The notes: a model not told the origin generated them from the sequence alone. Numbered from the stretch's first letter, positions 313 through 63,615 are shown. The stretch is DNA of 64,000 nucleotides from IMGVR_UViG_3300023257_000007:248001-312000, one strand, 5' to 3'. A program made the numbers and translations.

Positions 313-322
313 TATATATTGA
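313..322 (-). promoter_or_regulatory. Putative late-promoter-like motif (TCAATATATA variant)
   Basis: Variant of recurrent TTAATATATA, 8 nt upstream of an N-tagged start. Confidence 0.45.
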
Positions 323-359
323 ATTTGTTTTTTCAAAATAAATTTTGTATTTTATATTT

Positions 360-641
360 ATGAAATTTTATTATTTAGAAGTAAAAGAAAAGGATTGGAA
401 TGAAGTTATAAACTATATAACTAAAGTTATTCCTATTTGGAATGAAAAGTTTGATATAAGTCTTCCTATTAAACATATTGGATTTTATATAGATCTAAAG
501 AATGAATTTGGTTTAAATAATGATAATTTATTATTGTTTCGTTATCATAAATTAAATTTTAAAACTTGTGATTATATAAAGTGTAAGGATATAGAAGAAT
601 TCTTATTTTCTTATGAATCAAGTAAGATGGGATTATTGTAA
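360..641 (+). CDS. Small hypothetical protein, C-tag A
   Basis: Ends ESSKMGLL; start moved to ATG 360 (MKFYYLEVKEKDW). Confidence 0.8.
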   Translation: MKFYYLEVKEKDWNEVINYITKVIPIWNEKFDISLPIKHIGFYIDLKNEFGLNNDNLLLFRYHKLNFKTCDYIKCKDIEEFLFSYESSKMGLL

Positions 642-662
642 CATTATTAAATAAAACAAAGA

Positions 663-986
663 ATGAACATAGCTATCGAGTTATATACTAAGAAAGAGTT
701 ATTTAAGGCATGGAAAAAGATGTTAGATTTAGGATATAATTTAGATGTTTGGCATAGAATTTACATGGAGAAGGATTATAATTGGATTGGATTTGATTAT
801 ATAAAAAAAAGGGGTGGTCTTTATATTTATTTTGATTTAGATGAATATATAATGACTGGTTGGGATGGTTTATATAATATACACATGATTAAATATATTC
901 CTGATGATATGGATTTTATTATCAATCATATTGATATTGATTCGATTGATTCGTGTATAGAGGGTATTAAATTAGGTTTATTATAG
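663..986 (+). CDS. Small hypothetical protein, C-tag A; paralog of 2079-2399
   Basis: Ends EGIKLGLL; shares IAIE..KLF..W..M.DLGY and RGG.Y..FDLD with 2079-2399. Confidence 0.85.
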   Translation: MNIAIELYTKKELFKAWKKMLDLGYNLDVWHRIYMEKDYNWIGFDYIKKRGGLYIYFDLDEYIMTGWDGLYNIHMIKYIPDDMDFIINHIDIDSIDSCIEGIKLGLL

Positions 987-1035
987 ATTTGAAATTATGA
1001 GATTTTATAGGATCTACTAAAATGGGATTAATGTA

Positions 1036-1335
1036 ATGAATGAACTTGTATATATTAGTGTAAATAATAAGGAACAATATGATAGAGTTATACGTATTGC
1101 TGAAAATAATGGTTTTAAAACAAGAGGTAATTCCTCTTCTTTACCTGTTAATATTTATCTTTGTATTAAGGATGCTGTTGAAGGATCTTGGTTAAAGGAT
1201 GTTATTTATTTTAGTAGTAATGATTATGATCTATATAAAACTGTATTACCAGTTAGGATAAAATGTGATTATGAGGATTTTTCAGAAGAATATTTAAAGT
1301 TTATAACAGAATCAGATAAGATGGGATTATTATAA
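1036..1335 (+). CDS. Small hypothetical protein, C-tag A
   Basis: Ends ESDKMGLL. Confidence 0.85.
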   Translation: MNELVYISVNNKEQYDRVIRIAENNGFKTRGNSSSLPVNIYLCIKDAVEGSWLKDVIYFSSNDYDLYKTVLPVRIKCDYEDFSEEYLKFITESDKMGLL

Positions 1336-1337
1336 TT

Positions 1338-1749
1338 ATGAATGAATCGAATACAATATTGTGTGCTGCTTTTTGTGGTACTGGAAAAACTTATATTTGC
1401 AATCAGAATAAGAAGGCTATTAAAATTGAATATTGGAAGTATGAAAGAAGGACTAGAAAAAGAATATGTTAGTGATATAAAAAAGCAAATTGGAAAAGTA
1501 GATTATATTTTTTTAAGTACTGACATAGAAGGTTTGAAACTATTAAAAGGTTTTAATATTGTACTTGATTACCCTGAAAATAATTTGAGAAATGAATACC
1601 TTGATAGGTTTATTGATAGAGATAGTCCTTACGATTTTATAGGGACGTTTATGAAACATTGGAATATATGGATAGATGAACTTAAAGATCAAAATTATTG
1701 TAAACATATTATATTGAAAAATGGTGAGTACTTGCAAAATATTCTCTAA
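1338..1749 (+). pseudogene. P-loop NTPase/kinase-like gene split by a frameshift
   Basis: Frame from ATG 1338 reads MNESNTILCAAFCGTGKTYIC (Walker A-like); the plausible C-terminal half (KEYVSDIKK...DYIFLST...) is in the 1342 frame; shift near 1440-1450. Confidence 0.6.
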
Positions 1750-1779
1750 ATTAAAGACTATGTTTTAAATTAAATAACA

Positions 1780-2082
1780 ATGAATGATATAGATATAAAT
1801 GTAAATGAAGATAATTATATAGAATTTGTCAATTATTTATATAGTATTAATTATATAACTAAGAATGATAATGAAAGGTTAGTTAATTGGTATACTGATG
1901 TGAATGATTATTTTCAAAAAGAATATAACTCATATGAATATAGATTATTTTTTGATCGTAAAGAATGGGATATAATAGCTTGTTGTTGTGGCGGTTCTGA
2001 ATTTTTTAAAAAAGTAACTTTTATTAATAATTTAAAGGAATTAGAGGTTTATATGAATTGTTTAAAAATGGGGCTATTATGA
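1780..2082 (+). CDS. Small hypothetical protein, C-tag A
   Basis: Ends NCLKMGLL. Confidence 0.85.
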   Translation: MNDIDINVNEDNYIEFVNYLYSINYITKNDNERLVNWYTDVNDYFQKEYNSYEYRLFFDRKEWDIIACCCGGSEFFKKVTFINNLKELEVYMNCLKMGLL

Positions 2083-2399
2083 AAAGAATTGCAATAGAGA
2101 TATATTCCATAGAGAAATTATTTGAAATATGGGAAGAAATGGTTGATTTAGGTTACACTTTAAGTTCTTGGACTAATATATTTAAGAGAACAGAAATTGA
2201 TTGGCTTGGTTTTTTAAGTATTGAAAGAGGTGGTATTTATCTTTGTTTTGATTTAGATAAGTGTATAATGATTGGTTGGGGAAGTCTATATTATGATTCT
2301 GGAAAAAAGTTTATTATTAAAGATTTTGAATTAATTATAGATAGTAGTAAAGATGATATTAGATTTCATCTAAATTCAATTAAGATGGGGTTATTATAA
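2079..2399 (+). CDS. Small hypothetical protein, C-tag A
   Basis: ATGA overlap with upstream gene; ends NSIKMGLL; shares TTATAA 2394-2399 with the convergent gene. Confidence 0.85.
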   Translation: MKRIAIEIYSIEKLFEIWEEMVDLGYTLSSWTNIFKRTEIDWLGFLSIERGGIYLCFDLDKCIMIGWGSLYYDSGKKFIIKDFELIIDSSKDDIRFHLNSIKMGLL

Positions 2400-2747
2400 T
2401 AGTCCGAGTTTATTTCCTTGTATCAATATATCAAGATCCATTCCATATTCTTTTTTTAACCAATCATCACAACTTATAAAAGAATCTTTATAAAATGACA
2501 CATATTCTAATAGAAACTTCATTGAGCTCCAACACTTATCAAAGCGTTGACCATCATCTAATGTAAAAAATGTTTTATCTTTTGAAAAAGCAACCCAAAA
2601 ATTTTCTTTAAAATTTACTCTAGAATATTCTATATCATATTTTTCCTCAATTAATTTTATTATAAATTTTGTTTCTTTATGAGGTATATCAGTTATTACA
2701 ACAATATTATCCTCTTTATTTTCATTGTATGTATTAAGATATTTCAT
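2394..2747 (-). CDS. N-tagged, C-tag A hypothetical protein
   Basis: MKYLNTYNEN...QGNKLGLL. Confidence 0.85.
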   Translation of the reverse strand: MKYLNTYNENKEDNIVVITDIPHKETKFIIKLIEEKYDIEYSRVNFKENFWVAFSKDKTFFTLDDGQRFDKCWSSMKFLLEYVSFYKDSFISCDDWLKKEYGMDLDILIQGNKLGLL

Positions 2748-2770: not shown

Positions 2771-2802
2771 TTGTTTTATATATTAATTTGTTTTTTTAGA
2801 AT
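2771..2802. repeat. 32-bp intergenic repeat containing the TTAATATATA motif (copy 1; copy 2 at 5132-5163)
   Basis: ttgttttatatattaatttgtttttttagaat identical at both sites. Confidence 0.85.
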
Positions 2803-3322
2803 ATTTTTTTTATCTTTCAATATGAAAATAAATATAATGTATGCGGGGATGGCGGATGATATTATGCTTCCAATGTTACAAGTTCCAACTTTCATAATAA
2901 TCCAAGTTTATTTGCTTCTATTTTTATTTGATGGAGCCTTTGCTAGAAATGGTTGGGAAAGTCAAAAAGAAGATATAAGACAAACGTTATTGTCTGGTAA
3001 TAATGAGAATTCATGGCACAGGGAGGTATATTTAAAATATGAATCAGACACTCCAACTTTTTCATTAGAAGAAAAATGTGTTATATTATCTGATATAGAT
3101 AAAGATGAATGTTGGAAATTGACATTTGATTATAATGGAAAGCGCAGAGAACTAATTTATTATCATCATCAAAACTTTTATGATGTGTGGCCTGATAATA
3201 TAAAGGATATTAATCATTTATTTAGTATTGGTGCTACTTTTGAATATTTAACAGAACCTAAATTAAAAGAAATGTTGAAGACAAGATGTACTGGTTATTT
3301 ATATGATCAAGTGACACCATAA
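2771..3322 (+). CDS. Hypothetical protein with a hydrophobic N-terminal segment; true start probably downstream
   Basis: ORF track, 183 aa; no recognised domain. Confidence 0.55.
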   Translation: MFYILICFFRIFFLSFNMKINIMYAGMADDIMLPMLQVPTFIIIQVYLLLFLFDGAFARNGWESQKEDIRQTLLSGNNENSWHREVYLKYESDTPTFSLEEKCVILSDIDKDECWKLTFDYNGKRRELIYYHHQNFYDVWPDNIKDINHLFSIGATFEYLTEPKLKEMLKTRCTGYLYDQVTP

Positions 3323-4287: not shown

Positions 4288-4651
4288 AGACACCAAGATT
4301 TTTTGTCCCATTATACATATTTATCATATTTTGTAATTCATTCATAAATTCATCTTTAGTTATTAATATATCTGAGTGTTTATAATAACCGCAAGGACCA
4401 TAAATACGATTTAATTTATAATGAATTGTTCTACTTTCATGTTGTACACAGCAACTATACACCATTTTTCTTTTATCTTCCTCTTTTTCAAGTATATCAC
4501 AACATAATTCTATTTTTGTTCTATGTACATCAAATTTAAAATCATTTATAAGTTTATCATATATTTCAATTGCTTCTTTTGCGTTATTAAATTCAACTGA
4601 TATAAACTTATCTTCATCTATATTTTCATTATATGTTTTAAGGTATTTCAT
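4283..4651 (-). CDS. N-tagged, C-tag A hypothetical protein
   Basis: MKYLKTYNEN...NGTKNLGVL. Confidence 0.85.
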   Translation of the reverse strand: MKYLKTYNENIDEDKFISVEFNNAKEAIEIYDKLINDFKFDVHRTKIELCCDILEKEEDKRKMVYSCCVQHESRTIHYKLNRIYGPCGYYKHSDILITKDEFMNELQNMINMYNGTKNLGVL

Positions 4652-5121
4652 TATAATAATCCTAGTTTATTTGCTTCTAAATCTGCTTTAAGGTCTTCAC
4701 TTTTAAGGTATTCTAATATTTGTGAAAGTTTTTTATAATTTTTTAAATTTTTACTAACCCTTGTTAAAAGACTAAATTTATCTCTATTATTATCTTCAAT
4801 AAGATAAGCAATAACATCAACAATTTTACTAGTATTAATATCAACTGAATCTAATACTTCTAGATGTGTATAATTACCTAATTTAATATTTTCTGGTATT
4901 TTTATAAATACTTGTTCATATTTATCACCATGTAAAATATATTGATATTTATTATATATTTTAGCACATTCCTTTTTAATATCTGATATTAGTTTATTAA
5001 AATTATCAAAAATTGTTTTATCATTTATTTGTTTATAAAGCAATTCTTTTTGTTTATAAAATGATTCTTGTTGTTTATAGTTTTCTTCTATGTTTTCGTT
5101 ATATGTTTCACTTATGATCAT
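4651..5121 (-). CDS. Hypothetical protein, degenerate N-tag, C-tag A
   Basis: MIISETYNEN...EANKLGLL; TAATG overlap with next gene. Confidence 0.85.
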   Translation of the reverse strand: MIISETYNENIEENYKQQESFYKQKELLYKQINDKTIFDNFNKLISDIKKECAKIYNKYQYILHGDKYEQVFIKIPENIKLGNYTHLEVLDSVDINTSKIVDVIAYLIEDNNRDKFSLLTRVSKNLKNYKKLSQILEYLKSEDLKADLEANKLGLL

Positions 5122-5131: not shown

Positions 5132-5163
5132 TTGTTTTATATATTAATTTGTTTTTTTAGAAT
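5132..5163. repeat. 32-bp intergenic repeat with TTAATATATA motif (copy 2)
   Basis: Identical to 2771-2802. Confidence 0.85.
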
Positions 5164-5241
5164 TTTTTTCTTATATTACAATAATTATTAAAAATTATGA
5201 AAGAATTAATTTGGTTAAATATATGTTATAAAGGTCTTATG

Positions 5242-5494: not shown

Positions 5495-5905
5495 TTATAA
5501 AAGACCCATTTGACCTGTTATTAATAATCTTTTTACTTTTTTTAATGGTACTAAATAATTTTCCCAGTTTTCTGGACTATCATCTATACCATCTGTTATA
5601 TCTTTATCTTCCCAAACAGATATTGGTATTTTATTATCCTTTGTAAAGATAGTGTTTGCACCATTTTGATCAAATCGTATAATCTCTTCATCAAATAAAT
5701 TAAAAATTGTTCGACTTGTTTTTATATTATCATCAATATATGAATTATAGTCAGTAATTAAATGTTTTGCATATTGATTAAACCATTTACAACCATTCTT
5801 TATAGCTAAATTAGTATAAGTAAAATATTCATCAATATTACTTACTTCAAACACAAATAATACATTTGGTATTGTACTTTCATTATATGTTTTTAAATAT
5901 TTCAT
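5495..5905 (-). CDS. N-tagged, C-tag A hypothetical protein
   Basis: MKYLKTYNES...ITGQMGLL. Confidence 0.85.
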   Translation of the reverse strand: MKYLKTYNESTIPNVLFVFEVSNIDEYFTYTNLAIKNGCKWFNQYAKHLITDYNSYIDDNIKTSRTIFNLFDEEIIRFDQNGANTIFTKDNKIPISVWEDKDITDGIDDSPENWENYLVPLKKVKRLLITGQMGLL

Positions 5906-6085
5906 TATAGTTTATATATTTATTTTTTTATTTAAGAAAATTTTAACTATTTTTTTAATACCTTTAGTTTTAACTATTGGTATATTTTTAAAATAATTAT
6001 TTAATTCATCAACCATTTTAATTCTTAACTTAGATGTAATGGTCATAGACTTAGCAAATTGATTATATGTGTCTAATTTATTCAT

Positions 6086-6511
6086 TTATAATAGTCCTAA
6101 TTTAGTAGATTCAAATTTTGATTCTATATTTTCACTATGAATATATTCTATTATTTTTTCTTCAAATTCCGTAGAGCAACTCTCAATATAATAATTAGTG
6201 TCATTCACAGATTGAAGAAATATTCTATAAGAAGTCGAAATTTCTTCATCATACTTTATGATATATAATGATAAATCATCATCTGGATCTACAATTGTTC
6301 TTCTATCTATATTAGTAGGTTTATCTATAAAATCTGAACCAGATACATTTACTTTAACATCTGTTCTACTATTCAAATATTCATTAGGTTTACCATATTT
6401 ATTTATTAAATACTCACATCTATATAATAATTCTTCATCATCTTTATAAATATGATGAACAGTACCATTATCATATATTAATGATTCATTATAAGTTTTT
6501 AAATATTTCAC
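6086..6511 (-). CDS. N-tagged, C-tag A hypothetical protein (GTG start)
   Basis: GTG-KYLKTYNES...ESTKLGLL. Confidence 0.85.
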   Translation of the reverse strand: MKYLKTYNESLIYDNGTVHHIYKDDEELLYRCEYLINKYGKPNEYLNSRTDVKVNVSGSDFIDKPTNIDRRTIVDPDDDLSLYIIKYDEEISTSYRIFLQSVNDTNYYIESCSTEFEEKIIEYIHSENIESKFESTKLGLL

Positions 6512-6516
6512 AAGAC

Positions 6517-6526
6517 TATATATTAA
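6517..6526 (-). promoter_or_regulatory. TTAATATATA promoter-like motif
   Basis: Exact motif just upstream of N-tagged gene 6086-6511. Confidence 0.55.
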
Positions 6527-6630
6527 TTTTTTATTTTAAGATAAATTTTCTATATTAAAATTATGGATATTAAAGAAAACCTTAAAAATTATTATGAAAT
6601 TAGATAAATATTTCTTAATTAAAGATAAAT

Positions 6631-6954
6631 ATGATTAAAATTAATATTACGGGAATTAATTGTAATGAATTTGAAAAGTTACAAAAAATATTCTTTGATC
6701 AAAATATACCTTGGTATTATAGTGGTTATAAATTACAATCATCCGATGATTGTAATTATTATCATAACATTTATATTGTTTCAAAAATCGTTGTCATGAG
6801 AAATGATAACCATGAAAAAGAAGAATATTATATGACCTTTAAAAAAGATAATATAATCTCAAAAGACCAAGATTTAATTGAATATAAATATGATGAAATG
6901 GATGAGAATACATTAAAAAGTTATTTTAACGGTTTACAACTAGGATTATTATGA
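6631..6954 (+). CDS. Small hypothetical protein, C-tag A
   Basis: Ends NGLQLGLL. Confidence 0.85.
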   Translation: MIKINITGINCNEFEKLQKIFFDQNIPWYYSGYKLQSSDDCNYYHNIYIVSKIVVMRNDNHEKEEYYMTFKKDNIISKDQDLIEYKYDEMDENTLKSYFNGLQLGLL

Positions 6955-7269
6955 TATCAATAAATATAGAAAATATAAGTCTAAATGACTTCAAGAAATT
7001 GCAAATACATATGATTGATCAAAATATTCCTTGGATTGATGGTGATTGGGAAGTTTGGGTAGATGGATATTGGTCATTTATAATTAATCATAAAAAAAAA
7101 TATCTTACTAATTGATCAATATACATCAACTGGTAAACCAGTTGATGGTTACCTTAGATATAATATGCAATTGTGTAATGTTTCATCTCCAATCGTTTTA
7201 AGTGTTGAAGAAATGCTTGATTTAAATATATACGAATATTTGGAGGCGAAAAAGTTTAATTTATTATAA
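6951..7269 (+). pseudogene. Frameshifted paralog of 6631-6954, C-tag A
   Basis: MISINIENISLNDFKKLQIHMIDQNIPW... shifts at a poly-A run near 7092-7100; the other frame ends EYLEAKKFNLL. Confidence 0.7.
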
Positions 7270-7537: not shown

Positions 7538-7547
7538 TATATATTAA
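7538..7547 (-). promoter_or_regulatory. TTAATATATA promoter-like motif
   Basis: Exact motif 24 nt upstream of the N-tagged start at 7514. Confidence 0.55.
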
Positions 7548-7731
7548 AATTTAGATTTGAATATCAATACCCAGAATTTATATTCCAACCTCTACAATAT
7601 CATAAAATTAATTTTTATACCAAGAAATATTCCTTATATTTAAGTATTGGAATTTCGAAAAAATTGAAGAATTTTTATTTTTTGAACAAATTCCGTATAT
7701 TATAAATGATGAAATACATAAACTACTAAAT

Positions 7732-8622
7732 ATGGAAGAAAAAACAAAAATATTATTAAACGGCAAAGAAAATAAGAGCGAACTTATTAACTTACTTACA
7801 AAAGTTGATGTTTCTTGCTCTACTCGTGAACTAAATTCTGAGTTGATAGTTAAAATCAAACATTTTAACAAATGTATCGAAGAAAATATCGAATTCAGAA
7901 ATAAATTCAATGTTAATGAAAGATTTGAGTTCTTAGAAGATCTTACCAACATGATTATTGATGGTAAAGGTAACTCATTGATAGTTATAGGTGAAGGTGG
8001 ACTTGGTAAAACATTTACTGTATTAAGCACTTTATCAAAAAGAACAAAAACTGGATTTCTAAACCTTTTCAAGAAAAAAGAAGATGTTCACATAGTTAAA
8101 GGTTTCTCAACAGCTAGAGGTCTATATGATACATTATATGATAATAGAGATAAATTAATTTTATTTGACGACTGTGATTCAATCTTAGAAGATAAAACAG
8201 CTATTAATATTTTAAAATCAGCTTTAGATTCTTATGATACTAGAATCGTTACATGGTCTAAATTTTTGAAAAATAAAAACAATTATCCACAATCATTCGA
8301 ATTTACAGGTAGAATAATCTTTATCTCAAATAAAAAGAAAACTCAAATACCACAACCAATCTTAACAAGAGGTTATGTAGTTGATTTAGAAATGAGCAAT
8401 GGTGAGAAAATCGACAGAATGGCTCACATCATGCCAACACTTATCGAAGATAAAGGTAAAGGTAGATGGAGTTTAAATGATGGTTTTACGGCTTTAGAAT
8501 TCATTAGAATAAATATAGATGATGTTAAAGAACTAAGTATTAGAACATTAGTAGATGTTTTAAGAATAATGAAATCAAGAAAAAATTGGGAAAAATTAGC
8601 TTTATATACAATAACAGAATAA
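7732..8622 (+). CDS. AAA-family P-loop ATPase
   Basis: Walker A GEGGLGKT, Walker B LILFDDCD, sensor-like IIFISN. Confidence 0.85.
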   Translation: MEEKTKILLNGKENKSELINLLTKVDVSCSTRELNSELIVKIKHFNKCIEENIEFRNKFNVNERFEFLEDLTNMIIDGKGNSLIVIGEGGLGKTFTVLSTLSKRTKTGFLNLFKKKEDVHIVKGFSTARGLYDTLYDNRDKLILFDDCDSILEDKTAINILKSALDSYDTRIVTWSKFLKNKNNYPQSFEFTGRIIFISNKKKTQIPQPILTRGYVVDLEMSNGEKIDRMAHIMPTLIEDKGKGRWSLNDGFTALEFIRINIDDVKELSIRTLVDVLRIMKSRKNWEKLALYTITE

Positions 8623-8912
8623 TGACAACATATATAACAGATATACCATCAGAATATATATTATATCTTGATAAAATAATCAGTGAATATTATAATATGA
8701 AATCTATAATTAGACCTAATAAAAGAATCATAAAATATGATTATTATTTTATAAGTATCAATAAATATAATGATAATTGTCTGTGTTATTCAGGTATGTG
8801 TTATTTACATGAACTCATAGGACCAACCAGTGAAACTATTAATTATGTTGATTGGTTAGAAAAACATAATTTAACATACAAATTAGAATCAACCAAATTA
8901 GGATTATTATGA
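8622..8912 (+). CDS. Small hypothetical protein, C-tag A; tandem paralog of 8909-9205
   Basis: MTTYITDIPSEYILYLDKIISEYYNM...ESTKLGLL. Confidence 0.85.
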   Translation: MTTYITDIPSEYILYLDKIISEYYNMKSIIRPNKRIIKYDYYFISINKYNDNCLCYSGMCYLHELIGPTSETINYVDWLEKHNLTYKLESTKLGLL

Positions 8913-9205
8913 CATTATATATAACAGACATACCTCAAAAAGAAATATTATATCTTGATAAAATAATCAGTGAATATTATAATATGGAAACTATAACTCG
9001 TAGTATTAATAGAATTAATTTCACATTATATGATTATATTTATATAAGTGTTGGTAAAAATTGTACTGAGGGATTATATTATTCAGATATGAATTATTTA
9101 AAACATATTAAAAAACAGAACCATAAAACTATCAATTATATTGATTGGTTGAAAAAGAATAATTTATTCTATAAATTAGAATCAGCCAAATTAGGATTAT
9201 TATGA
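8909..9205 (+). CDS. Small hypothetical protein, C-tag A
   Basis: MTLYITDIPQKEILYLDKIISEYYNM...ESAKLGLL. Confidence 0.85.
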   Translation: MTLYITDIPQKEILYLDKIISEYYNMETITRSINRINFTLYDYIYISVGKNCTEGLYYSDMNYLKHIKKQNHKTINYIDWLKKNNLFYKLESAKLGLL

Positions 9206-9212
9206 TAATAAA

Positions 9213-9222
9213 TTAATATATA
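9213..9222 (+). promoter_or_regulatory. TTAATATATA promoter-like motif
   Basis: Exact motif 7 nt upstream of ATG 9230. Confidence 0.5.
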
Positions 9223-9229
9223 AATTAGA

Positions 9230-9517
9230 ATGATATTAACAGATGAAATATTAAATGAAATAAAAGGATTTAAAAACCAATTTGCAATTTATATGCGTAA
9301 TGGTGATATATTTTATATACCAAAAGGTAGACCAGTTCAATATGCCGCTGGAAGAATGATAGCAAATTCTGAAAAACATAATACTATTGAAATAATTAAA
9401 TTTATTAATATTCTTTATTTTGTTATTGATGGTAAAAGATATGATTTTGAACTACCAACTGTAAAATTAACTAGATATCAAAAAATAATTAATTTTTTTA
9501 AAAGACCAACTTTCTAA
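9230..9517 (+). CDS. Hypothetical protein
   Basis: ORF track, 95 aa. Confidence 0.7.
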   Translation: MILTDEILNEIKGFKNQFAIYMRNGDIFYIPKGRPVQYAAGRMIANSEKHNTIEIIKFINILYFVIDGKRYDFELPTVKLTRYQKIINFFKRPTF

Positions 9518-9520
9518 ATT

Positions 9521-10348
9521 ATGATAACACGAATTGCACCATCACCAACAGGATATTTTCATTTAGGAACTCTAAGAACTGCACTACTAAATTATTTAAT
9601 GGCAAGAGCAAACAATGGAACATTCATCCTTAGAATTGATGATACCGACCAAGAAAGAAATCAAAACACATTCACAAACTATATCTATAAACAAATGAAT
9701 AAATTTGGCCTTGATTATGATATAACTTTTAAACAATCAGAAAGATTAGACAGATATAAAGAAGTAGCATATAAAATAGGAACAAAAACTGAAAATGGTT
9801 ATGAATTAAATATGGGAGAATATTCAATGGTTATACTCAGAAATAACGGTTTTCCTACCTATAATTTCTGTTCAATTCTTGATGATTATGATTATGATGT
9901 TACAGATATAGTCAGAGGTGTTGACCATATCGCAAACGAATCTAAACAAAAAATTATATGGGATTTGATTTGTTATGTAGAAAGTGATAAACCTTTTCCT
10001 AATATAATTCATGCTGGTTTACTTTTTGAAGGAAATAAAAAGCTTTCTAAAAGAAGTGGTAATGGTCTAACAGAAGATTATTTAGATTTTAGTACTAATG
10101 CAATATTAAATTGGTTATTAAAATTTGGTTGGTCACATCCAGACCCAAACTTCGATAAGAAGTATCCTACATTAAATATGAATCAAATGATTAATTTATT
10201 CAATGATGGTAAAATCTCCGATAGAAATTGTAAAATAGATAAGGCTAAATTAAACTTTTTAAATAAAAAATGGAGATACTTAGAAAGAAAAGCTAATGAA
10301 AACTCTAAACTTTCTAAGTTTAATGAATTTAATAATGGTCTATTGTAA
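9521..10348 (+). CDS. Minimal glutamyl-tRNA synthetase-like (class I aaRS catalytic domain) protein
   Basis: RIAPSPTGYFHLG (HIGH), LRIDDTD, RGVDH, KLSKR (KMSKS); lacks most of the acceptor-binding insertion and the anticodon domain. Confidence 0.85.
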   Translation: MITRIAPSPTGYFHLGTLRTALLNYLMARANNGTFILRIDDTDQERNQNTFTNYIYKQMNKFGLDYDITFKQSERLDRYKEVAYKIGTKTENGYELNMGEYSMVILRNNGFPTYNFCSILDDYDYDVTDIVRGVDHIANESKQKIIWDLICYVESDKPFPNIIHAGLLFEGNKKLSKRSGNGLTEDYLDFSTNAILNWLLKFGWSHPDPNFDKKYPTLNMNQMINLFNDGKISDRNCKIDKAKLNFLNKKWRYLERKANENSKLSKFNEFNNGLL

Positions 10349-11160: not shown

Positions 11161-12327
11161 ATGTTAAAATCATATAAATATAGATTATATCCAAATCAAG
11201 ATCAAAAAGAATTAATGTCAAAAATTTTTGGTCAAGTAAGATTTGTATATAACCTTGGTTTAGAAACAAAAACATTAGCATATGTTGGAAATAAAACCAA
11301 TTATACTTGTTTTGATTTAAATAAACAAATAACTGAACTTAAAAAAACAGATGCCCCTTGGCTTAAAGAAAGTCCATCACAGGCATTACAAATGTCTATG
11401 AGAAACCTGGATAATGCTTATACAAATTTTTTTAAAGGTGCCGGGTTTCCTAAATTCAAGTCAAAATATACAAAACAATCATTCCAATTACCACAAGGTG
11501 TATTTTTAAGTGAAAATAATAAACAAATTTATATACCTAAACTAAAACTGGTTGATATTGATTTACACAGAGAATTTAAAGGTGACATAAAGACAATAAC
11601 AGTAAGCAAAACAACAACAAACAAATATTATATCAGCATTTTAGTTGATAATAAAAAAGAATTACCTGAAAAGAAACCAATTAAATTAGAAACAACAGTT
11701 GGAATTGATTTGGGTATTAAAGATTTTGCTATCACTTCAGATGGAAAGAAATTCAAGAACCACGATTTCTTTAAATCTTCAATGAAAAAGTTAAGGGTGG
11801 AACAGCGATCCCTTAGTAGAAAACAAAAAGGATCAAACCATTACAACAAACAAAAATTAAAGGTTGCCTTGTTACACGAACACACTAGAAACCAACGAAA
11901 AGATTATTTACATAAAATAAGTAAATATTTGGTAGATAATTATGACACAATTTGTATCGAAAATCTTGGTGTAAGTAATATGGTTAAAAACCATAACCTT
12001 GCTCGTGCTATAAGTGATATGGGTTGGGGTGAATTTAAATCAATGGTTGATTATAAATGTGAATGGTATGGTAAAAATTTAAGTATAATTGGTAGATTTG
12101 ATCCATCAAGCAAAACATGCTCTAATTGTGGTTCAATCAATAAAGAATTGACTTTGAAAGATAGGGAATGGATTTGCTCTAAATGTGGAATAGAACATGA
12201 CAGGGATATAAATGCTGCAATAAATATAAGAAATTTTGGGTTGAGGAACCAACCCAGCGTCACCCAAAGTGAATGGTTACATTGTGCTTGTGGCGTAGAA
12301 ACACATCAGTCTTTAGCTGATGTGTAG
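11161..12327 (+). CDS. tnpB: TnpB RNA-guided endonuclease (IS605 OrfB type)
   Basis: N-terminal YKYRLYP HTH; RuvC GIDLG / IENL / DRDINAA; CxxC...CxxC zinc ribbon. Confidence 0.95.
   Translation: MLKSYKYRLYPNQDQKELMSKIFGQVRFVYNLGLETKTLAYVGNKTNYTCFDLNKQITELKKTDAPWLKESPSQALQMSMRNLDNAYTNFFKGAGFPKFKSKYTKQSFQLPQGVFLSENNKQIYIPKLKLVDIDLHREFKGDIKTITVSKTTTNKYYISILVDNKKELPEKKPIKLETTVGIDLGIKDFAITSDGKKFKNHDFFKSSMKKLRVEQRSLSRKQKGSNHYNKQKLKVALLHEHTRNQRKDYLHKISKYLVDNYDTICIENLGVSNMVKNHNLARAISDMGWGEFKSMVDYKCEWYGKNLSIIGRFDPSSKTCSNCGSINKELTLKDREWICSKCGIEHDRDINAAINIRNFGLRNQPSVTQSEWLHCACGVETHQSLADV
12301..12325 (+). other. IS right-end hairpin (3' part of predicted omegaRNA, overlapping the tnpB 3' end)
   Basis: acacatcag-tctttag-ctgatgtgt, perfect 9-bp stem. 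Confidence 0.8.
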
Positions 12328-12408
12328 TTCATAGTCTAGAATGGTCAAAAATATTTTAATATTTTGAAAAATTTCCTTATATTAATATTAATTAACTTAA
12401 AACTAAAA

Positions 12409-12730: not shown

Positions 12731-13069
12731 ATGAATAAAAAAGCAATATTAGCAATAAAAGTCACAAATAAACAAGAATGGTCTGATGTTGAAGATTATT
12801 TCTTAAATAAAGGTATAACTTGGGCATGTCTATCAAATGATAATAAATATGATCCAGACAAAGATTATCTAGGACAATCTTTTCTAACATATATTTCATA
12901 TATAATTGATGATTTATCAGAATATATAATCAGTGCAGAAAAAGATCATTTATATACTATTGATGGAAAACTAATAGAAAGAGTTAAATCTTTTACTTTA
13001 TTTATTGATAAATGGGACAAACCAATATTTGATGAATATATAGAAGGAAATAAAATGGGACTATTATAA
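12731..13069 (+). CDS. Small hypothetical protein, C-tag A
   Basis: Ends EGNKMGLL. Confidence 0.85.
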   Translation: MNKKAILAIKVTNKQEWSDVEDYFLNKGITWACLSNDNKYDPDKDYLGQSFLTYISYIIDDLSEYIISAEKDHLYTIDGKLIERVKSFTLFIDKWDKPIFDEYIEGNKMGLL

Positions 13070-15354: not shown

Positions 15355-15376
15355 AGGCTTATTCAAGCCTTTTTTC
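15353..15376 (+). terminator. Intrinsic terminator
   Basis: aaaggctt-attc-aagccttt stem followed by a T run, directly after the stop of 14722-15354. Confidence 0.7.
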
Positions 15377-15393: not shown

Positions 15394-15403
15394 TTAATAT
15401 ATA
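15394..15403 (+). promoter_or_regulatory. TTAATATATA promoter-like motif
   Basis: Exact motif 5 nt upstream of the N-tagged operon starting at 15409. Confidence 0.55.
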
Positions 15404-19953: not shown

Positions 19954-19978
19954 AAATAAAAATAAATATATAATTTTA

Positions 19979-23268: not shown

Positions 23269-23288
23269 AAATAATATATATTAAAAAT

Positions 23289-25044: not shown

Positions 25045-25054
25045 TTAATATATA
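25045..25054 (+). promoter_or_regulatory. TTAATATATA promoter-like motif
   Basis: Exact motif 7 nt upstream of ATG 25062. Confidence 0.55.
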
Positions 25055-27338: not shown

Positions 27339-27348
27339 TTAATATATA
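27339..27348 (+). promoter_or_regulatory. TTAATATATA promoter-like motif
   Basis: Exact motif upstream of the 27369 operon. Confidence 0.5.
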
Positions 27349-30930: not shown

Positions 30931-30987
30931 AGATTTTCTTTATTATTTAATACAATATACGAAATTCGTCCAAAAATAAAAAATAAC

Positions 30988-31212
30988 TTATAACAAACCA
31001 AACTTCTTAGATTCAACAAGAGACTTCAACATATTAAAATCATCATCAAGAATCAAAGAAAATTCATTATCAGGAAAACCAAATTGATCTAATGAATTTA
31101 TTGTTTTTTGATAAGTTTCTTTGTGTAATTTATAATAAATTATCATGATATTTCCTGTATATTTAAAAAGTTTTTTATCTTTTCTATTTCCTCTGTCGTT
31201 AAAGAATTCCAA
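30988..31212 (-). CDS. Small hypothetical protein, C-tag A (start uncertain; may be a frameshifted continuation of 31143-31535)
   Basis: Ends ESKKFGLL. Confidence 0.6.
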   Translation of the reverse strand: MEFFNDRGNRKDKKLFKYTGNIMIIYYKLHKETYQKTINSLDQFGFPDNEFSLILDDDFNMLKSLVESKKFGLL

Positions 31213-32921: not shown

Positions 32922-32989
32922 TATAAAATTTAGTTAATTATTCTAATATAATAAATTTATTCAAGAAATAAAAAAAATATATAGGAATA

Positions 32990-36953: not shown

Positions 36954-36963
36954 TTAATATATA
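36954..36963 (+). promoter_or_regulatory. TTAATATATA promoter-like motif
   Basis: Exact motif upstream of 36989. Confidence 0.55.
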
Positions 36964-45106: not shown

Positions 45107-45267
45107 TTAATATGATTTTAAGGGGGGTGAGTAATTATTATTTATCTGTTAGAATTGGTGTTTTCTTTTTATTTTTTTGCCTTTTAACGAATTCTTCATG
45201 TTTTTTGTCAAAAATATAACCATTTTTTTCGATCTTTTTAATGATATGTTTTTCTGCATCATCTAAC

Positions 45268-46024: not shown

Positions 46025-46424
46025 CTATTATTTATTTTTAAATTCCAATTCTTTTCCTTTTAATTCTTGGCTTCGTTTTTTCAAATTTTTCAGAAAACGA
46101 TTAACACGGGGCAAGGAAAATGTTTCTCCAATAGATTCTTTACGTTTTGGTATAGTTTTCATAATATTTTATTTCCTTTTCTTTATATATTAATTGATTC
46201 TTTAGGTATGTTTTTCATTTTCATTTATCTTCTTTTTCTTCTGTAGAATTGTTGTTTGTTTTTAATTTTTCTGCCTTTTAACAAATTCTTCATGCTTTTC
46301 ATCAAAAATATAACCATCTTTTTTAATCTTTTCAAGAATATGTTCTTCAACATTATCTAACATTTTTTGTTTTCTTTCTTCTCTTGTCATAATTATGATT
46401 TTCTTTTTATTATTATATTTTTCT

Positions 46425-47351: not shown

Positions 47352-47361
47352 TATATATTAA
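47352..47361 (-). promoter_or_regulatory. TTAATATATA promoter-like motif
   Basis: Exact motif 18 nt upstream of N-tagged 47333. Confidence 0.55.
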
Positions 47362-57211: not shown

Positions 57212-58408
57212 TTAATTTGAACCAATAGTTATTAATTCTGGATGAACAGCACACCCTCTATCCCATTTAAATTCTGGGACTACTTTTTTTAATATATTAT
57301 ATGATGCGTTTAAATCAGCATTTATTAATATGTTTTCTTTACTTTTAAACATACCCCTTGAAACCCTTTTACCACAATATTCTTTATGTTTTTTTAATTC
57401 TTCACCATCAATAAAAGAACATTTACTTGTGAAACTTTCTTCATTTAATTTAACATTCAAACCTTCTTTTAATGCTTTATATTCAATCATTTGAATTAAT
57501 TTATAAAAAGGTATTTGAACAAAATTTTGATTATTCTTCTTACCCATATTTACATTTTGTTTCCAACTTTTATTATAACCAATAATTATTGTATTTAAAT
57601 CATTTTTTAAACAAAAATCAACCAAATATTTAGATGCATTATGTAAGTAATTATTTATTTTATTATTTCTTTTTTCAGTTAATAAATATAACCTTTTACT
57701 TATAAAAGTTTTCTTTGGTAATTTTGATTGTAATTTAGACAACTTTTTATTATAATATTGATTAATTGATTTTAATGGTCTACCGTTAATGATTATAGGT
57801 TTTACAACCTTTTCATTTGAAGTTATAGCCATTAAATTATTTACACCTAAATCAACACTACAATATTTACTATTGTCTAACTTTAAAGGTTTTTCATCAT
57901 ATTTATATACTATATTTATTTTATATTTTTTTGTTTTAAGTGGTTTTACCTGAACCTCAATTATTTTTTTACTTTTATTTTGAAATGGTAATTTAATACC
58001 TGTTTTATATAATTCTATATAACCTTCCTTTTCAAGATTTTTAGTTTTTACAGCATTATCCACCAAAATGGCTGTAAATTTACTATTTTTAGGTAAATAT
58101 TTAGGTAAATTTGGTTTACCAGTAAATCTATTTGGATTCTTTTTCCATTCTTTCATAGCGTTAAAAAAACTTTTCCAATTTGCATTAAGTATTCTTAGTG
58201 TTGGTCTAGCAATTCTAGATAATAAATCTTTATATTCTACGTGATCTTTCATAATGGTATACATATCATATACTGTAATATAATTACCATGATTAATAAA
58301 TTCCTGTCTGATAATGTAGTTAGCTTTATTGTAAAGATTTTTGGTTTTAACACAAATATCGTTTAAATTATTGTTATTTTTAATTATATGTGATTCAATT
58401 AAATACAA
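57212..58408 (-). CDS. tnpB: TnpB-family nuclease (IS1341-like clade), TTG start; no tnpA nearby
   Basis: KNLYNKANY, SVDLGVNN, IIIGYNKSWKQ, NEESFTSKCS, INADLNASYNI. Confidence 0.9.
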   Translation of the reverse strand: MYLIESHIIKNNNNLNDICVKTKNLYNKANYIIRQEFINHGNYITVYDMYTIMKDHVEYKDLLSRIARPTLRILNANWKSFFNAMKEWKKNPNRFTGKPNLPKYLPKNSKFTAILVDNAVKTKNLEKEGYIELYKTGIKLPFQNKSKKIIEVQVKPLKTKKYKINIVYKYDEKPLKLDNSKYCSVDLGVNNLMAITSNEKVVKPIIINGRPLKSINQYYNKKLSKLQSKLPKKTFISKRLYLLTEKRNNKINNYLHNASKYLVDFCLKNDLNTIIIGYNKSWKQNVNMGKKNNQNFVQIPFYKLIQMIEYKALKEGLNVKLNEESFTSKCSFIDGEELKKHKEYCGKRVSRGMFKSKENILINADLNASYNILKKVVPEFKWDRGCAVHPELITIGSN

Positions 58409-58437: not shown

Positions 58438-58447
58438 TATATATTAA
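58438..58447 (-). promoter_or_regulatory. TTAATATATA promoter-like motif upstream of the second tnpB
   Basis: Exact motif 30 nt upstream of the start. Confidence 0.45.
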
Positions 58448-61752: not shown

Positions 61753-61943
61753 ATTATATCATATATTATTAGTATATCTTTATCCCATTCACTACCTTTA
61801 GATAATGTAATTTTTATATCAATAATTTTATATTTTTCTTTATTCTCATTGATCCACTCATTAATTCTTGTTTGAACTTGAGTTTGTCTAATATCATATA
61901 AAAACTTAACCTGTAATGTTTCTTCTGTTTTATTTAAACTCAT
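61749..61943 (-). CDS. Small hypothetical protein, tandem paralog
   Basis: Same family; 41-bp junction identity 61741-61781 vs 61932-61972. Confidence 0.75.
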   Translation of the reverse strand: MSLNKTEETLQVKFLYDIRQTQVQTRINEWINENKEKYKIIDIKITLSKGSEWDKDILIIYDII

Positions 61944-62143
61944 ATTATATCATATATTATTAGTATATCTTTTCTAAACTCATATTCTTCATCAGAAGAC
62001 GATGCAATTATATTTATATCTATAATTTTATAATTAGATTTATTTTTCTCAATCCAATTGTTTATTTTCTTTGATACCTTTTTTTGTTTAATATCATATA
62101 AATAATGGACTCTCTTTGTTTCGTCTATTTTATTTAGGTTCAT
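61940..62143 (-). CDS. Small hypothetical protein, tandem paralog
   Basis: Same family. Confidence 0.75.
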   Translation of the reverse strand: MNLNKIDETKRVHYLYDIKQKKVSKKINNWIEKNKSNYKIIDINIIASSSDEEYEFRKDILIIYDII

Positions 62144-62246
62144 AAATTATCAGTATTGATTTGTAAGAACTAGAATAACTACCACCAGTAGAATTTGATA
62201 TTATTTTAATATTTATTAATTCAATATCCTCATTTTCCTTTAACCA
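62130..62246 (-). pseudogene. 5'-truncated fourth paralog of the 61552-62143 family
   Basis: WLKENEDIELINIKIISNSTGGSYSSSYKSILIIYEPK; no start; overlaps the coaC 3' end. Confidence 0.6.
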
Positions 62247-62700
62247 TTAAACCTTTAACAGGTGATATAATATGTGTATTATCCATAGATGCGACCAATC
62301 CTTCATTGAATTGATATTGAACACTTTCATACATTTTAGTATTCATTGCAGGACATATAATTCTAGGAGTTTCTTTTGGAAGAGCGATAAATGTACTAGT
62401 CACGAAATCATCAGCGATTCCATGTGCAAATTTAGCCATAATATTAGCAGTTGCTGGTACACAGATAAAAGCATCACAATTTTGTGCTTCCACAATATGT
62501 GATACTATATTTGGATCATCATTCGTAATATAATTACCTGATATAGTTCCTATAACTGTGGGAGTTATAAAATTTAGAGCATTTTTAGTTGTCATAACTC
62601 TAACAATATAACCAGAGGCTTTTAAACCTGAAATAACATCAGCAACTTTATAGGCTGATATACCACCACTAATGGCTATTAATATTGTTTTTGTGTTCAT
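62230..62700 (-). CDS. coaC: HFCD flavoprotein / phosphopantothenoylcysteine decarboxylase (CoaC-like), C-terminally truncated
   Basis: ILIAISGGISAYK, VPATANIMAKFAHGIADD, PAMNTKMY; ends PVKGLMVKGK without the LACG-type Cys motif. Confidence 0.8.
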   Translation of the reverse strand: MNTKTILIAISGGISAYKVADVISGLKASGYIVRVMTTKNALNFITPTVIGTISGNYITNDDPNIVSHIVEAQNCDAFICVPATANIMAKFAHGIADDFVTSTFIALPKETPRIICPAMNTKMYESVQYQFNEGLVASMDNTHIISPVKGLMVKGK

Positions 62701-62863
62701 TTATAAGTTCTTTATGCGATTTAATTTCAAAATAATCATCGAGAAATTTAATCAATTCTTTATATTATATTTTTCATCACCACTACTACTATATACTGTG
62801 AAAGATTTAACCGTAGATAAATTAAGTCTTTTGTTCTTTACTTTTATCCAAAGATCTTGTTTA

Positions 62864-63118
62864 TTATTCATATTCTTCTATTGCCTCCTCAACTGTTCTT
62901 ACATCAAAATATTTATTTAGGAAATCAACGAATTTCTTTCTATCATCTTCATTTCCAAACCAACAATCATGACATTCTTTTTCATAATCATAGAGTTCAA
63001 TACAAAATGGCCCACTACCATATTTTTTAAAGTATCTAATATTCTTTAAATTTATAGTATGCCCATTTTCCCCCTTCTCATTTAATTTAATCCAATAATC
63101 TTGTTCATTTAACGACAT
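62864..63118 (-). CDS. Hypothetical protein
   Basis: ORF track. Confidence 0.65.
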   Translation of the reverse strand: MSLNEQDYWIKLNEKGENGHTINLKNIRYFKKYGSGPFCIELYDYEKECHDCWFGNEDDRKKFVDFLNKYFDVRTVEEAIEEYE

Positions 63119-63121
63119 ATC

Positions 63122-63367
63122 TTACATTTTAGGGTAAATAAATTCTTTTCTAACTTTAGTCTCTATAGTTACATAATTATCAGACAATTCAACAATTCTA
63201 CCATCCATTCCATCTGAAAGTTGATTAAATTTAACATCATCACCTTTTCTCATACATTTTCTATATTTTCGAGCAATTCTCTCTTTTTTAACTGATTTTA
63301 TAATTCTATAAAATATATAACCTATAATACAAATTATACCTATTGCAAATAATATTTTTATTGTCAT
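63122..63367 (-). CDS. Small single-TM protein (YajC-like topology)
   Basis: N-terminal TM followed by RKGDDVKF...GRIVELSDNYVTIE. Confidence 0.5.
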   Translation of the reverse strand: MTIKILFAIGIICIIGYIFYRIIKSVKKERIARKYRKCMRKGDDVKFNQLSDGMDGRIVELSDNYVTIETKVRKEFIYPKM

Positions 63368-63522
63368 AATAATCCTAAATCTTTTCCATTAAGATAATCA
63401 GCTAATCTTTCTTTTAATATATCGGCCAATTCATCTTCTGTTAATATTTCTCTTAATTTACTCATGATAATATCGTAATTTAATGGTTCATCAATACTAC
63501 AAAAATCTTCATCATTACTCAT
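63364..63522 (-). CDS. 52-aa hypothetical protein, C-tag A (not in the ORF track)
   Basis: MSNDEDF...ADYLNGKDLGLL. Confidence 0.7.
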   Translation of the reverse strand: MSNDEDFCSIDEPLNYDIIMSKLREILTEDELADILKERLADYLNGKDLGLL

Positions 63523-63605
63523 TTATTCATTTATTTTTTAATCAACTGTAATATACAAAAAAATTTTAAATAAAAAAACGTGTTATAAAAATTAAGAAGT
63601 TTATT

Positions 63606-63615
63606 TTAATATATA
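63606..63615 (+). promoter_or_regulatory. TTAATATATA promoter-like motif
   Basis: Exact motif upstream of 63639 and 63679. Confidence 0.55.

What the first reader, a model, noticed from the sequence alone, without database searches (positions are those of the whole stretch)
313..63615. TTAATATATA promoter-like motif marks the N-tagged transcription units
Seen: TTAATATATA or AAATATATA lies about 5-40 nt upstream of first genes at 313, 2777, 5138, 5913, 6517, 7538, 9213, 15394, 19964, 21495, 23275, 25045, 27339, 32975, 36540, 36954, 46184, 47352, 58438 and 63606. Most of these lead N-tagged genes, whereas the divergent C-tag-only operons lack it on their own strand. A 32-bp version is identical at 2771 and 5132. 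Established: T4 late promoters are a single -10-like TATAAATA box. Inference: a phage late-sigma promoter, consistent with late synthesis of packaged cargo, while C-tag-only genes would be early or middle. Caveat: the motif is AT-only in very AT-rich DNA.
Basis: partly seen in the sequence, partly recalled or inferred. Interest (0 to 1): 0.6.

Follow-up and report, generated by a model that had tools for sequence, protein, structure and literature searches.

The report
Conserved single-box promoter of a huge phage
The AT-rich word TTAATATATA is a real, direction-specific, evolutionarily conserved promoter-like signal of a clade of huge uncultured phages that probably infect Bacteroidota. It drives many kinds of genes, not only the N-tagged ones, and it sits beside a second, host-type promoter class that marks the likely early genes.

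Summary
All 16 exact TTAATATATA sites exist (5.3 expected), and each lies 5-63 nt upstream of a co-oriented ORF. The four weaker sites are variants; AAATATATA alone is not enriched.

The window belongs to a 348-kb, 25% GC phage contig related to the 630-735 kb "Mahaphage" genomes. Genome-wide, the box tTTAATATATA has 87 intergenic hits against 5-18 expected. Its density is 2.05/kb between genes and 0.05/kb inside them. In tandem gaps it is co-oriented 51:6, and convergent gaps have none. No -35 element accompanies it.

The box is conserved upstream of 49 of 54 diverged tail-sheath orthologues and is the top intergenic 10-mer in 907 kb of relatives. Spacing to the start codon is bimodal, at exactly 5 nt or about 21 nt. 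An A-rich step begins at the 6th base after the box. Both facts suggest a start site there and many leaderless mRNAs.

The box is not specific to N-tagged genes: 75 of 96 led genes are untagged, including tail sheath, topoisomerase II and homing endonucleases.

A second class resembling Bacteroidota sigma-A promoters (TAnnTTTG) fills a 30-kb one-strand region and leads the divergent C-tag-only units.

I found no gp55, phage RNA polymerase, TBP or TFIIB. One conserved ECF-type sigma is the candidate reader. Late timing is untested.

The parts
313..323 (-). Variant box TTCAATATATA, 7 nt before ORF 3-305 (MKYLSTYLEN, N-tagged)
   Evidence: PWM 10.1 bits, intergenic
2777..2786 (-). Exact box, 29 nt before ORF ending at 2747 (MKYLNTYNEN). 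It is part of a 33-bp module identical to the one at 5138, and its reverse strand overlaps the upstream part of a class-E site for the divergent + gene
5138..5147 (-). Exact box, 16 nt before ORF 4651-5121 (MIISETYNEN)
5913..5921 (-). Variant ATAAATATATA, 7 nt before ORF 5495-5905 (MKYLKTYNES)
   Evidence: PWM 9.5 bits
6517..6526 (-). Exact box, exactly 5 nt before the GTG start of ORF 6086-6511 (VKYLKTYNES); predicted leaderless
7538..7547 (-). Exact box, 23 nt before an ORF beginning MKYLKTYDES
9213..9222 (+). Exact box, 7 nt before ORF 9230-9517 (untagged)
15394..15403 (+). Exact box, exactly 5 nt before ORF 15409-15783 (MKYLNRYNES). A terminator-like hairpin at 15353-15372 lies just upstream
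19964..19972 (+). Variant ATAAATATATA, 6-9 nt before an ORF beginning MMYLKTYENF
   Evidence: PWM 9.5 bits
21495..21504 (+). Exact box, 6 nt before an ORF beginning MMYLKTYENF
23275..23284 (-). Exact box, 6 nt before ORF 22396-23268 (290 aa, untagged)
25045..25054 (+). Exact box, 7 nt before an ORF at 25062 (MKYLKYYESS)
27339..27348 (+). Exact box, 20 nt before ORF 27369-27863 (hydrophobic N-terminus, untagged)
32975..32983 (+). Weak variant AAAAATATATA, 6 nt before ORF 32990-33364 (MKYIKSYNEN)
   Evidence: read from the sequence; PWM below 7.5 bits
36540..36549 (+). Exact box, 8 nt before ORF 36558-36938 (MKFLKTYETY)
36954..36963 (+). Exact box, 25 nt before ORF 36989-38374 (461 aa)
46184..46193 (-). 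Exact box, 21 nt before an ORF beginning MKTIPKRKES
47352..47361 (-). Exact box, 18 nt before ORF 46425-47333 (TTG start)
58438..58447 (-). Exact box, 29 nt before the TnpB-like ORF 57212-58408
63606..63615 (+). Exact box, 24 nt before a mini-ORF and 63 nt before ORF 63679 onward
2779..2820 (+). Class-E (host sigma-A-like) site for the divergent + strand unit; a weaker variant of the ...CCGTAT[AC]TTTGTAT consensus
   Evidence: genome position 250809
5140..5181 (+). Class-E-like site for a divergent + strand ORF
   Evidence: genome position 253170
6519..6560 (+). Class-E-like site for the + strand unit 6631-7115
   Evidence: genome position 254549
7603..7705 (+). Two class-E sites ahead of the AAA-ATPase unit 7732-10348
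   Evidence: genome positions 255633 and 255694
12346..12387 (+). Class-E site ahead of the C-tag-only unit 12409 onward
   Evidence: genome position 260376
30950..30991 (-). Class-E site ahead of ORF 30607-30930
   Evidence: genome position 278961
32941..32982 (-). Class-E site ahead of the - strand unit 32580-32921, back to back with the weak box at 32975
   Evidence: genome position 280952

Best explanation
tTTAATATATA is the single -10-like box of this phage clade's own promoter class. It has no -35 element.

Inferred mechanism: transcription starts at the 6th base after the box, giving the extended consensus box-N5-AAA. Where the start codon sits exactly 5 nt after the box, the mRNA is leaderless. 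This holds for about 15% of sites, or up to about 30% if spacings of 5-9 nt are counted, and the class is enriched in N-tagged genes. Elsewhere the mRNA has a short A-rich leader of about 16 nt.

The class drives structural genes, the N-tag gene arrays, homing endonucleases and some DNA-metabolism genes.

A separate class resembles Bacteroidota sigma-A promoters: a T-run, then about 19 nt, then TAnnTTTG with a conserved CCG just before it. It drives a 30-kb one-strand region of small genes and tRNAs. It also drives the divergent C-tag-only units in the window. These are most likely the early genes, read by the unmodified host polymerase.

The main box is then most likely read by the host core polymerase redirected by a phage specificity factor. 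The only candidate seen is a conserved ECF-type sigma at contig position 108598-109194.

Shown here: enrichment, direction, position, clade conservation, spacing, and separation of the two classes. Inferred: promoter activity, the start site, leaderless mRNAs, timing, and which factor reads the box.
For: Enrichment and placement
- 16 sites against 5.3 expected in the window.
- 83 exact sites in the contig, 69 of them intergenic although only 12% of the contig is intergenic.
- 87 intergenic PWM hits against 5-18 in Markov simulations.
- No -35 information in the flanks.
- Tandem gaps: 51 co-oriented against 6 opposed. The 45 divergent gaps hold 53 hits on both strands. The 46 convergent gaps hold none.

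Conservation
- 49 of 54 unique regions upstream of tail-sheath orthologues (40-57% amino-acid identity) carry the box in the forward direction at variable distance. Controls gave 0 of 54 inside the gene and 3 of 54 in reverse.
- It is the top intergenic 10-mer in 59 related loci: 237 intergenic against 26 coding.
- In five relatives' records it is enriched about 4- to 8-fold over the backwards control.

Start-site register
- Spacing is bimodal, with a spike at 5 nt, both here and in relatives (26 of 261).
- A reaches 75-78% at bases 6-8 after the box, even when sites with a nearby start codon are removed.
- 3 of 15 starts at 5-nt spacing are GTG, against 7 of 514 gene calls overall.

Two classes
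- The second class was found de novo.
- The 217-247.5 kb region has 58 genes, all on the + strand, and 1 main box in 42 gaps against 94 in 254 elsewhere (p = 6e-7).
- Tag against promoter class: p = 2.5e-4.

Host and candidate factor
- TAnnTTTG at -12 to -5 is the Flavobacterium sigma-A box (PMC9723704).
- Bacteroidota host: relatives are so predicted (PMC7162821), and a phage protein carries a T9SS sorting domain.
- The ECF sigma is present and conserved in three relatives.
- Precedent: the phiEco32 sigma gp36 is presumed to read the single AATGTA element centred at -11.5 (PMC12276001).
Against: - There are no transcript data: no RNA run was listed. Promoter activity, start site and timing are therefore unproven.
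- The link between the sigma and the box is only a candidate link. One 243-kb relative rated 100% complete has 63 boxes but no detectable homologue of the sigma.
- Lak phage has sigma-70-family genes but no enrichment of the box.
- ECF sigmas normally need a -35 element, and none is seen here.
- The box also precedes topoisomerase II and a helicase, so 'late only' is doubtful.
- The contig is estimated to be about half of a genome, so the true reader may lie in the missing half.
- My gene calls are home-made.
Confidence: 0.72

Rival explanations
1. The box is read by a phage-encoded RNA polymerase (phiKZ/AR9-like multisubunit or crAss-like) rather than by a redirected host polymerase.
For: AR9 virion-polymerase promoters are long AT-rich conserved words (AAATATATATTAT-N6-G+1), and phiKZ-type promoters start 6 nt after the element (PMC5312081). 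That matches the architecture and inferred register seen here. About half the genome is missing. Several proteins of 700-1800 aa have no family match.
Against: There are no Rpb2_6, Rpb1_2 or T7-type polymerase matches in this contig or in the 735-kb relative (whole record searched). There is no DxDGD catalytic motif in a large protein. The presence of host-type promoters suggests dependence on the host polymerase.
Confidence: 0.12
2. It is a true T4-style late promoter, read by a gp55-like minimal sigma with a co-activator and the sliding clamp.
For: It has a single AT-rich -10-like box without a -35. It lies in front of structural genes and homing endonucleases, and of N-terminally tagged small proteins that recall T4 internal proteins. 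gp55 homologues are short and diverge quickly.
Against: The PHROG models for gp55 (phrog_234, phrog_12791) found nothing in this contig. phrog_234 also found nothing in the 735-kb relative, and only a 12-bit chance-level hit elsewhere. The box sequence differs from TATAAATA.
Confidence: 0.1
3. It is not a promoter. It could be a translation-initiation or AT-rich ribosome-loading element, a regulator-binding site, or a recombination junction that shuffles gene cassettes.
For: Many sites sit only 5-9 nt from the start codon. Identical 33-bp modules recur. Bacteroidota use A/U-rich signals rather than Shine-Dalgarno sequences (PMC6847099 abstract, seen).
Against: Distance to the orthologous sheath start varies from 19 to 89 nt, while a separate A-rich block stays next to the ATG. 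The box is absent before most operon-internal genes: 0 of 158 genes with gaps under 5 nt have one. It is strictly directional and absent from convergent gaps.
Confidence: 0.05
4. It is a chance AT-only word in AT-rich DNA.
For: The genome is 25% GC, and AAATATATA alone is at chance level.
Against: See: large excess over matched backgrounds, direction, position and conservation.
Confidence: 0.01

Closest known systems
phiEco32 middle/late promoters read by the phage sigma gp36
   Same: One conserved -10-region element (AATGTA centred at -11.5, PMC12276001; here AATATA inside the box, 5 of 6 identical). No conserved -35. Early genes are left to the host sigma. The phage encodes a small sigma-70-family protein with sigma-2 and sigma-4 parts.
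   Different: The host phylum differs (Bacteroidota). The box is longer (10-11 nt). The sigma here is a clear ECF-family member, and its link to the box is untested. No gp79-like partner was sought.
T4 late promoters (TATAAATA) with gp55, gp33 and gp45
   Same: Single AT-rich box about 5 nt upstream of the start site, with no -35. It precedes structural genes and homing endonucleases, and small proteins with a shared N-terminal peptide.
   Different: No gp55 homologue was detected. The consensus differs. Many predicted leaderless mRNAs are not a T4 trait.
phiKZ/AR9 virion-RNA-polymerase early promoters
   Same: A long, highly conserved AT-only word with the start about 6 nt downstream (PMC5312081).
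   Different: No phage RNA polymerase was found. Here the box precedes structural genes rather than early genes.
Bacteroidota sigma-A promoters (-33 TTTG / -7 TAnnTTTG)
   Same: The second class (class E) fits this: TAnnTTTG with a T-run about 19 nt upstream (PMC9723704).
   Different: The main box has no TTTG and does not fit. Class E carries extra conserved bases (CCG before TA, GAA at about -23).

Membership tests
T4-type late transcription (gp55/gp33/clamp) | Single -10-region box, no -35 | tested here: met
   There is no information outside the 11-nt box. The sequence is TTAATATATA, not TATAAATA.
T4-type late transcription (gp55/gp33/clamp) | gp55-family sigma encoded by the phage | tested here: not met
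   phrog_234 and phrog_12791 gave no match in the contig. phrog_234 gave none in the 735-kb relative. The contig is only about 49% of a genome.
T4-type late transcription (gp55/gp33/clamp) | Late, replication-coupled timing | not testable with these tools
   No RNA run was listed.
Phage sigma-directed single-element promoters (phiEco32 gp36 type) | Phage-encoded sigma-70-family factor | tested here: met
   A 198-aa protein carries Sigma70_r2 and r4_2. Its closest solved relatives are SigW and RpoE. It is conserved in 3 relatives.
Phage sigma-directed single-element promoters (phiEco32 gp36 type) | That sigma recognises the box | tested here: inconclusive
   Co-occurrence is mixed: one relative has the box without the sigma, and Lak has sigmas without the box.
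Phage sigma-directed single-element promoters (phiEco32 gp36 type) | Separate host-sigma promoters for early genes | tested here: met
   About 55 class-E sites of TAnnTTTG type are clustered at 217-247 kb, where the main box is nearly absent. The early timing itself is inferred.
phiKZ/AR9 virion-polymerase promoters | Phage multisubunit RNA polymerase | tested here: not met
   There are no Rpb2_6 or Rpb1_2 matches in the contig, its near-identical 344.6-kb twin or the 735-kb relative.
Bacteroidota sigma-A promoter | TAnnTTTG at -7 with a T-rich -33 | tested here: not met
   The main box lacks TTTG. This is met only by the separate class E.
Archaeal/eukaryal TATA box | TBP and TFIIB encoded or available | tested here: not met
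   There are no TBP or TFIIB matches in the contig or in two relatives.

The most novel reading that the evidence does not exclude
The box is read by a specificity factor or polymerase with no detectable homology to known ones. It creates a large regulon of truly leaderless mRNAs in a Bacteroidota host, where leaderless mRNAs are rare (5.5% in F. psychrophilum, PMC9723704). The regulon is preferentially used for proteins carrying the MKYLKTY.E N-terminal peptide, so promoter, start codon and tag would form one fused module for late-made, possibly packaged, proteins.
Probability: 0.2. Interest if true: 0.65.

Novelty: new member of a known kind. Interest (0 to 1): 0.45.

Why it matters
The clade includes the largest phage genomes known, and none of its members is cultured. 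A conserved, easily scanned promoter together with a separate host-type class gives three things. First, it provides a map of transcription units and a first guess at temporal classes for hundreds of unknown genes. Second, it provides sequence-based support for a Bacteroidota host. Third, it provides defined templates for testing the phage sigma in vitro. The fixed 5-nt box-to-ATG spacing predicts widespread leaderless translation in a phylum where that is uncommon.

Tried and rejected
- **RNA evidence:** the one run search listed no RNA run.
- **gp55 models:** no match.
- **Cellular-type and T7-type RNA polymerase domains:** no match. The T7 control rang nowhere, so that one result is weak.
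- **TBP and TFIIB (TATA-box reading):** no match.
- **DxDGD motif in large proteins:** none found.
- **E. coli-type sigma-70 scan:** 190 sites against 191 expected, so uninformative.
- **AAATATATA alone:** at chance level.
- **Literature search for the word:** none of the 15 listed of 85 papers concerns a phage promoter.
- **Box in other phages:** not enriched in Lak-B2, Tenacibaculum phage PTm1 or Flavobacterium phage MaF61, so no cultured model carries it.
- **Sigma/box co-occurrence:** inconclusive.
- **Promoter of the sigma gene itself:** unclear. There is only a 9.9-bit box variant about 85 nt upstream here and a TAnnTTTG in one relative.
- **Rfam:** only tRNAs were found.
Full report
**Context.** The window is bases 248001-312000 of a 348,222-bp linear IMG/VR phage contig. 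The contig is 25.2% GC and CheckV estimates it as about 49% complete. Its tail sheath is closest (44-47% identity) to the 630-735 kb uncultured phages LR7565xx, and more distantly related to Lak and to Flavobacterium and Tenacibaculum phages. The genomes above 634 kb were placed in the 'Mahaphage' clade with predicted Bacteroidetes hosts (PMC7162821). A 1583-aa phage protein ends in a type IX secretion sorting domain. This, together with the TAnnTTTG-type promoters described below, fits a Bacteroidota host.

**The observation.**
- Exact TTAATATATA occurs 16 times in the window against 5.3 +/- 2.3 in dinucleotide shuffles. All sites are at the listed coordinates, and each is followed on its own strand by an ORF start 5-63 nt away.
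- The sites at 313, 5913, 19964 and 32975 are weaker variants that keep the ATATATA core.
- AAATATATA by itself is at chance level.
- The modules at 2771 and 5132 share 33 identical bases.

**More than chance.**
- I made my own gene calls: 514 genes covering 88% of the contig.
- Of 83 exact sites in the contig, 69 are intergenic.
- Expectation-maximisation on upstream regions gave the box tTTAATATATA with no information elsewhere, so there is no -35 element.
- Hits of at least 11 bits number 87 between genes (2.05/kb) and 15 within genes (0.049/kb). Order-1 to order-4 Markov simulations of the intergenic DNA gave 5-18.
- Direction: tandem gaps hold 51 co-oriented hits against 6 opposed. The 45 divergent gaps hold 53 hits split between the strands. 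The 46 convergent gaps hold none.
- Ninety-seven genes have a site of at least 10 bits in their upstream gap. None of the 158 genes with a gap under 5 nt has one.

**Conservation.**
- A scan with the sheath protein returned 79 related loci.
- In 49 of 54 unique upstream regions of sheath orthologues, the box lies in the forward direction within 100 nt. Its distance varies from 19 to 89 nt, while a separate A-rich block stays next to the ATG. Controls gave 0 of 54 inside the gene and 3 of 54 in reverse.
- In 59 non-redundant related loci (907 kb), TTAATATATA is the commonest intergenic 10-mer (237 intergenic against 26 coding). PWM hits run at 2.67/kb between genes against 0.057/kb within them.
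- Whole-record counts against the backwards word:

| Record | Box | Backwards control |
|---|---|---|
| 735-kb genome | 135 | 21 |
| Relative 2 | 63 | 16 |
| Relative 3 | 39 | 5 |
| Relative 4 | 33 | 6 |
| Relative 5 | 26 | 6 |

- The box is not enriched in Lak-B2, PTm1 or MaF61. It is therefore a trait of this subclade only.

**Spacing and inferred start site.**
- The distance from the box to the start codon is bimodal: a sharp spike at 5 nt and a broad peak near 19-25 nt. This holds here and in the relatives (26 of 261 at exactly 5 nt, with a second peak at 21-22).
- Independently, bases 6-8 after the box are 75-78% A, against about 50% at bases 1-5. This remains so after removing sites that have a start codon nearby, in both data sets.
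- Three of 15 starts at 5-nt spacing are GTG, against 7 of 514 gene calls overall.
- I infer a start site at the 6th base. That gives leaderless mRNAs for the 5-nt class and leaders of about 16 nt for the other class. This is inference only: no RNA run was listed.

**What the box drives.**
- Directly downstream lie the tail sheath, a tail-spike-like protein, a 1116-aa conserved protein, topoisomerase II, tRNA nucleotidyltransferase, a helicase, several homing endonucleases and a TnpB-like gene.
- Baseplate and terminase genes lie in runs headed by a box.
- Genome-wide, only 15 of 96 led genes carry the N-tag.
- Most N-tagged genes (30 of 50 by the broad pattern) are operon-internal. They follow the previous gene's ...K[ML]GL[LIY] end directly, with a TAATG overlap.
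- N-tagged genes are over-represented in the short-spacing class: 9 of 28 against 6 of 69 (p = 0.01).

**A second promoter class.**
- Upstream regions lacking the box are enriched for CCGTATATTTGTAT and TATCTTTGTAT.
- An iterated PWM finds about 55 sites with the consensus ATTTTT-N3-TT-N2-GAA-N-AA-N2-TCCGTAT[AC]TTTGTAT. This amounts to TAnnTTTG with a T-run about 19 nt upstream, which is the Flavobacterium/Bacteroides sigma-A pattern (PMC9723704).
- These sites crowd the 217-247.5 kb region, where all 58 genes are on one strand. tRNAs lie there. The main box is almost absent there: 1 in 42 gaps against 94 in 254 elsewhere (p = 6e-7).
- In the window they lead the + strand units at about 2809, 5170, 6549, 7633/7694 and 12376, and the - strand units at about 30961 and 32952. 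They often sit back to back with a main box.
- Leading N-tagged genes use the main box 15 times and class E never. Leading C-tag-only genes use the main box 6 times and class E 10 times (p = 2.5e-4).
It also explains why the divergent units 'lack' the box.
- The UvsX-DnaB-NrdA operon has neither class, so a third class is likely.

**Who reads the box.**
- I found no gp55-family sigma, no cellular-type or T7-type polymerase domains, no TBP or TFIIB, and no DxDGD motif in a large protein.
- The contig encodes one sigma-70-family protein. It has 198 aa, carries regions 2 and 4, and is ECF-like.
- That sigma is conserved at 41-49% identity in three relatives. In the 735-kb genome it carries an insertion of about 90 aa inside region 4.
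- One 243-kb relative has the box but no detectable homologue. Lak has sigma genes but no box. The sigma is therefore only a candidate.
- The nearest described analogue is phiEco32: its sigma gp36 is presumed to read a single AATGTA element centred at -11.5, while the host sigma reads the early promoters (PMC12276001).
- AR9 and phiKZ virion-polymerase promoters look similar in form (PMC5312081), but they need a phage polymerase that I did not find.

**Verdict.** The promoter reading is well supported by direction, position and deep conservation. The T4-like, gp55 and strictly late parts of the interpretation are not shown. The box is a general promoter of the phage's non-early genes rather than a marker of N-tagged units. 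It is a new member of the known kind 'phage-specific single-box promoter'. Its useful extras are a predicted leaderless register and a clean partner class of host-type promoters.

**Limits.** The gene calls are my own. About half of the genome is missing. There are no transcript data.

Noticed in passing
whole contig; in the window e.g. ORFs 663-986, 1036-1335, 12731-13069, 26013-26507: 105 of 514 predicted proteins (20%) end in the same C-terminal peptide ...[EN]x x K[ML]GL[LIY]. Many are about 100-aa proteins arranged in tandem, and the next gene often starts at a TAATG overlap. The function is unknown.
   Followed up: partly
window 2394-2747, 5495-5905, 6086-6511, 15409-15783, 20440-20919 and others; 41-50 genes in the contig: The N-terminal peptide MKYLKTY(N/S/E)E is kept through synonymous codon changes (TTA/CTT/CTA, TAT/TAC, AAA/AAG). 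It is therefore conserved as protein, not as DNA. It resembles the T4 capsid-targeting peptide as I recall it (memory only, not tested).
   Followed up: partly
contig 217000-247500 (L011-L013): A one-strand block of 58 small genes. It has about 40 host-type promoters, terminator hairpins, at least 8 tRNA genes (in the 220-240 kb part scanned), and strong AAGGAGGA Shine-Dalgarno-like sites, which are unusual for a Bacteroidota system.
   Followed up: partly
contig 224920-224990, 229626-229700, 235505-235580, 237419-237490, 239875-239950 (L012): Five copies of a roughly 55-nt element (..GGCGGAG..GAGTAGACTCCAAyTTGCG..), each directly downstream of a class-E promoter and with no ORF. It is possibly a small RNA family. 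There was no Rfam match.
   Followed up: partly
contig 320410-325161 (L014:8410-13161, - strand): A 1583-aa phage protein with MAM, GEVED and a type IX secretion C-terminal sorting domain. This suggests a phage-encoded cargo of the host's T9SS and a Bacteroidota host.
   Followed up: no
contig 7684-9219, 10105-11751, 14693-16504, 45342-46943, 96479-98200; DNA polymerase pieces at 42106-43161 and 44292-45305: There are at least five large homing endonucleases of one family (phrog_3339), most with their own box. The B-family DNA polymerase is split into pieces, with such an endonuclease and another ORF between or beside them.
   Followed up: no
window 11161-12327 (+) and 57212-58408 (-): Two TnpB / IS605 OrfB-like genes. 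The second is preceded by a main box and a hairpin-like sequence.
   Followed up: no
L104 (735-kb relative, record 491216-492070) and L107: The sigma orthologue in the largest relatives carries an insertion of about 90 aa between the two helices of the region-4 helix-turn-helix.
   Followed up: no
contig 133366-139236 (+): The UvsX-like, DnaB-like and NrdA operon has neither promoter class upstream, which hints at a third (middle?) class.
   Followed up: no
window 13657-14547 (+): A 296-aa protein with DNA polymerase beta thumb and helix-hairpin-helix domains (PolX-like) but without an obvious polymerase palm.
   Followed up: no
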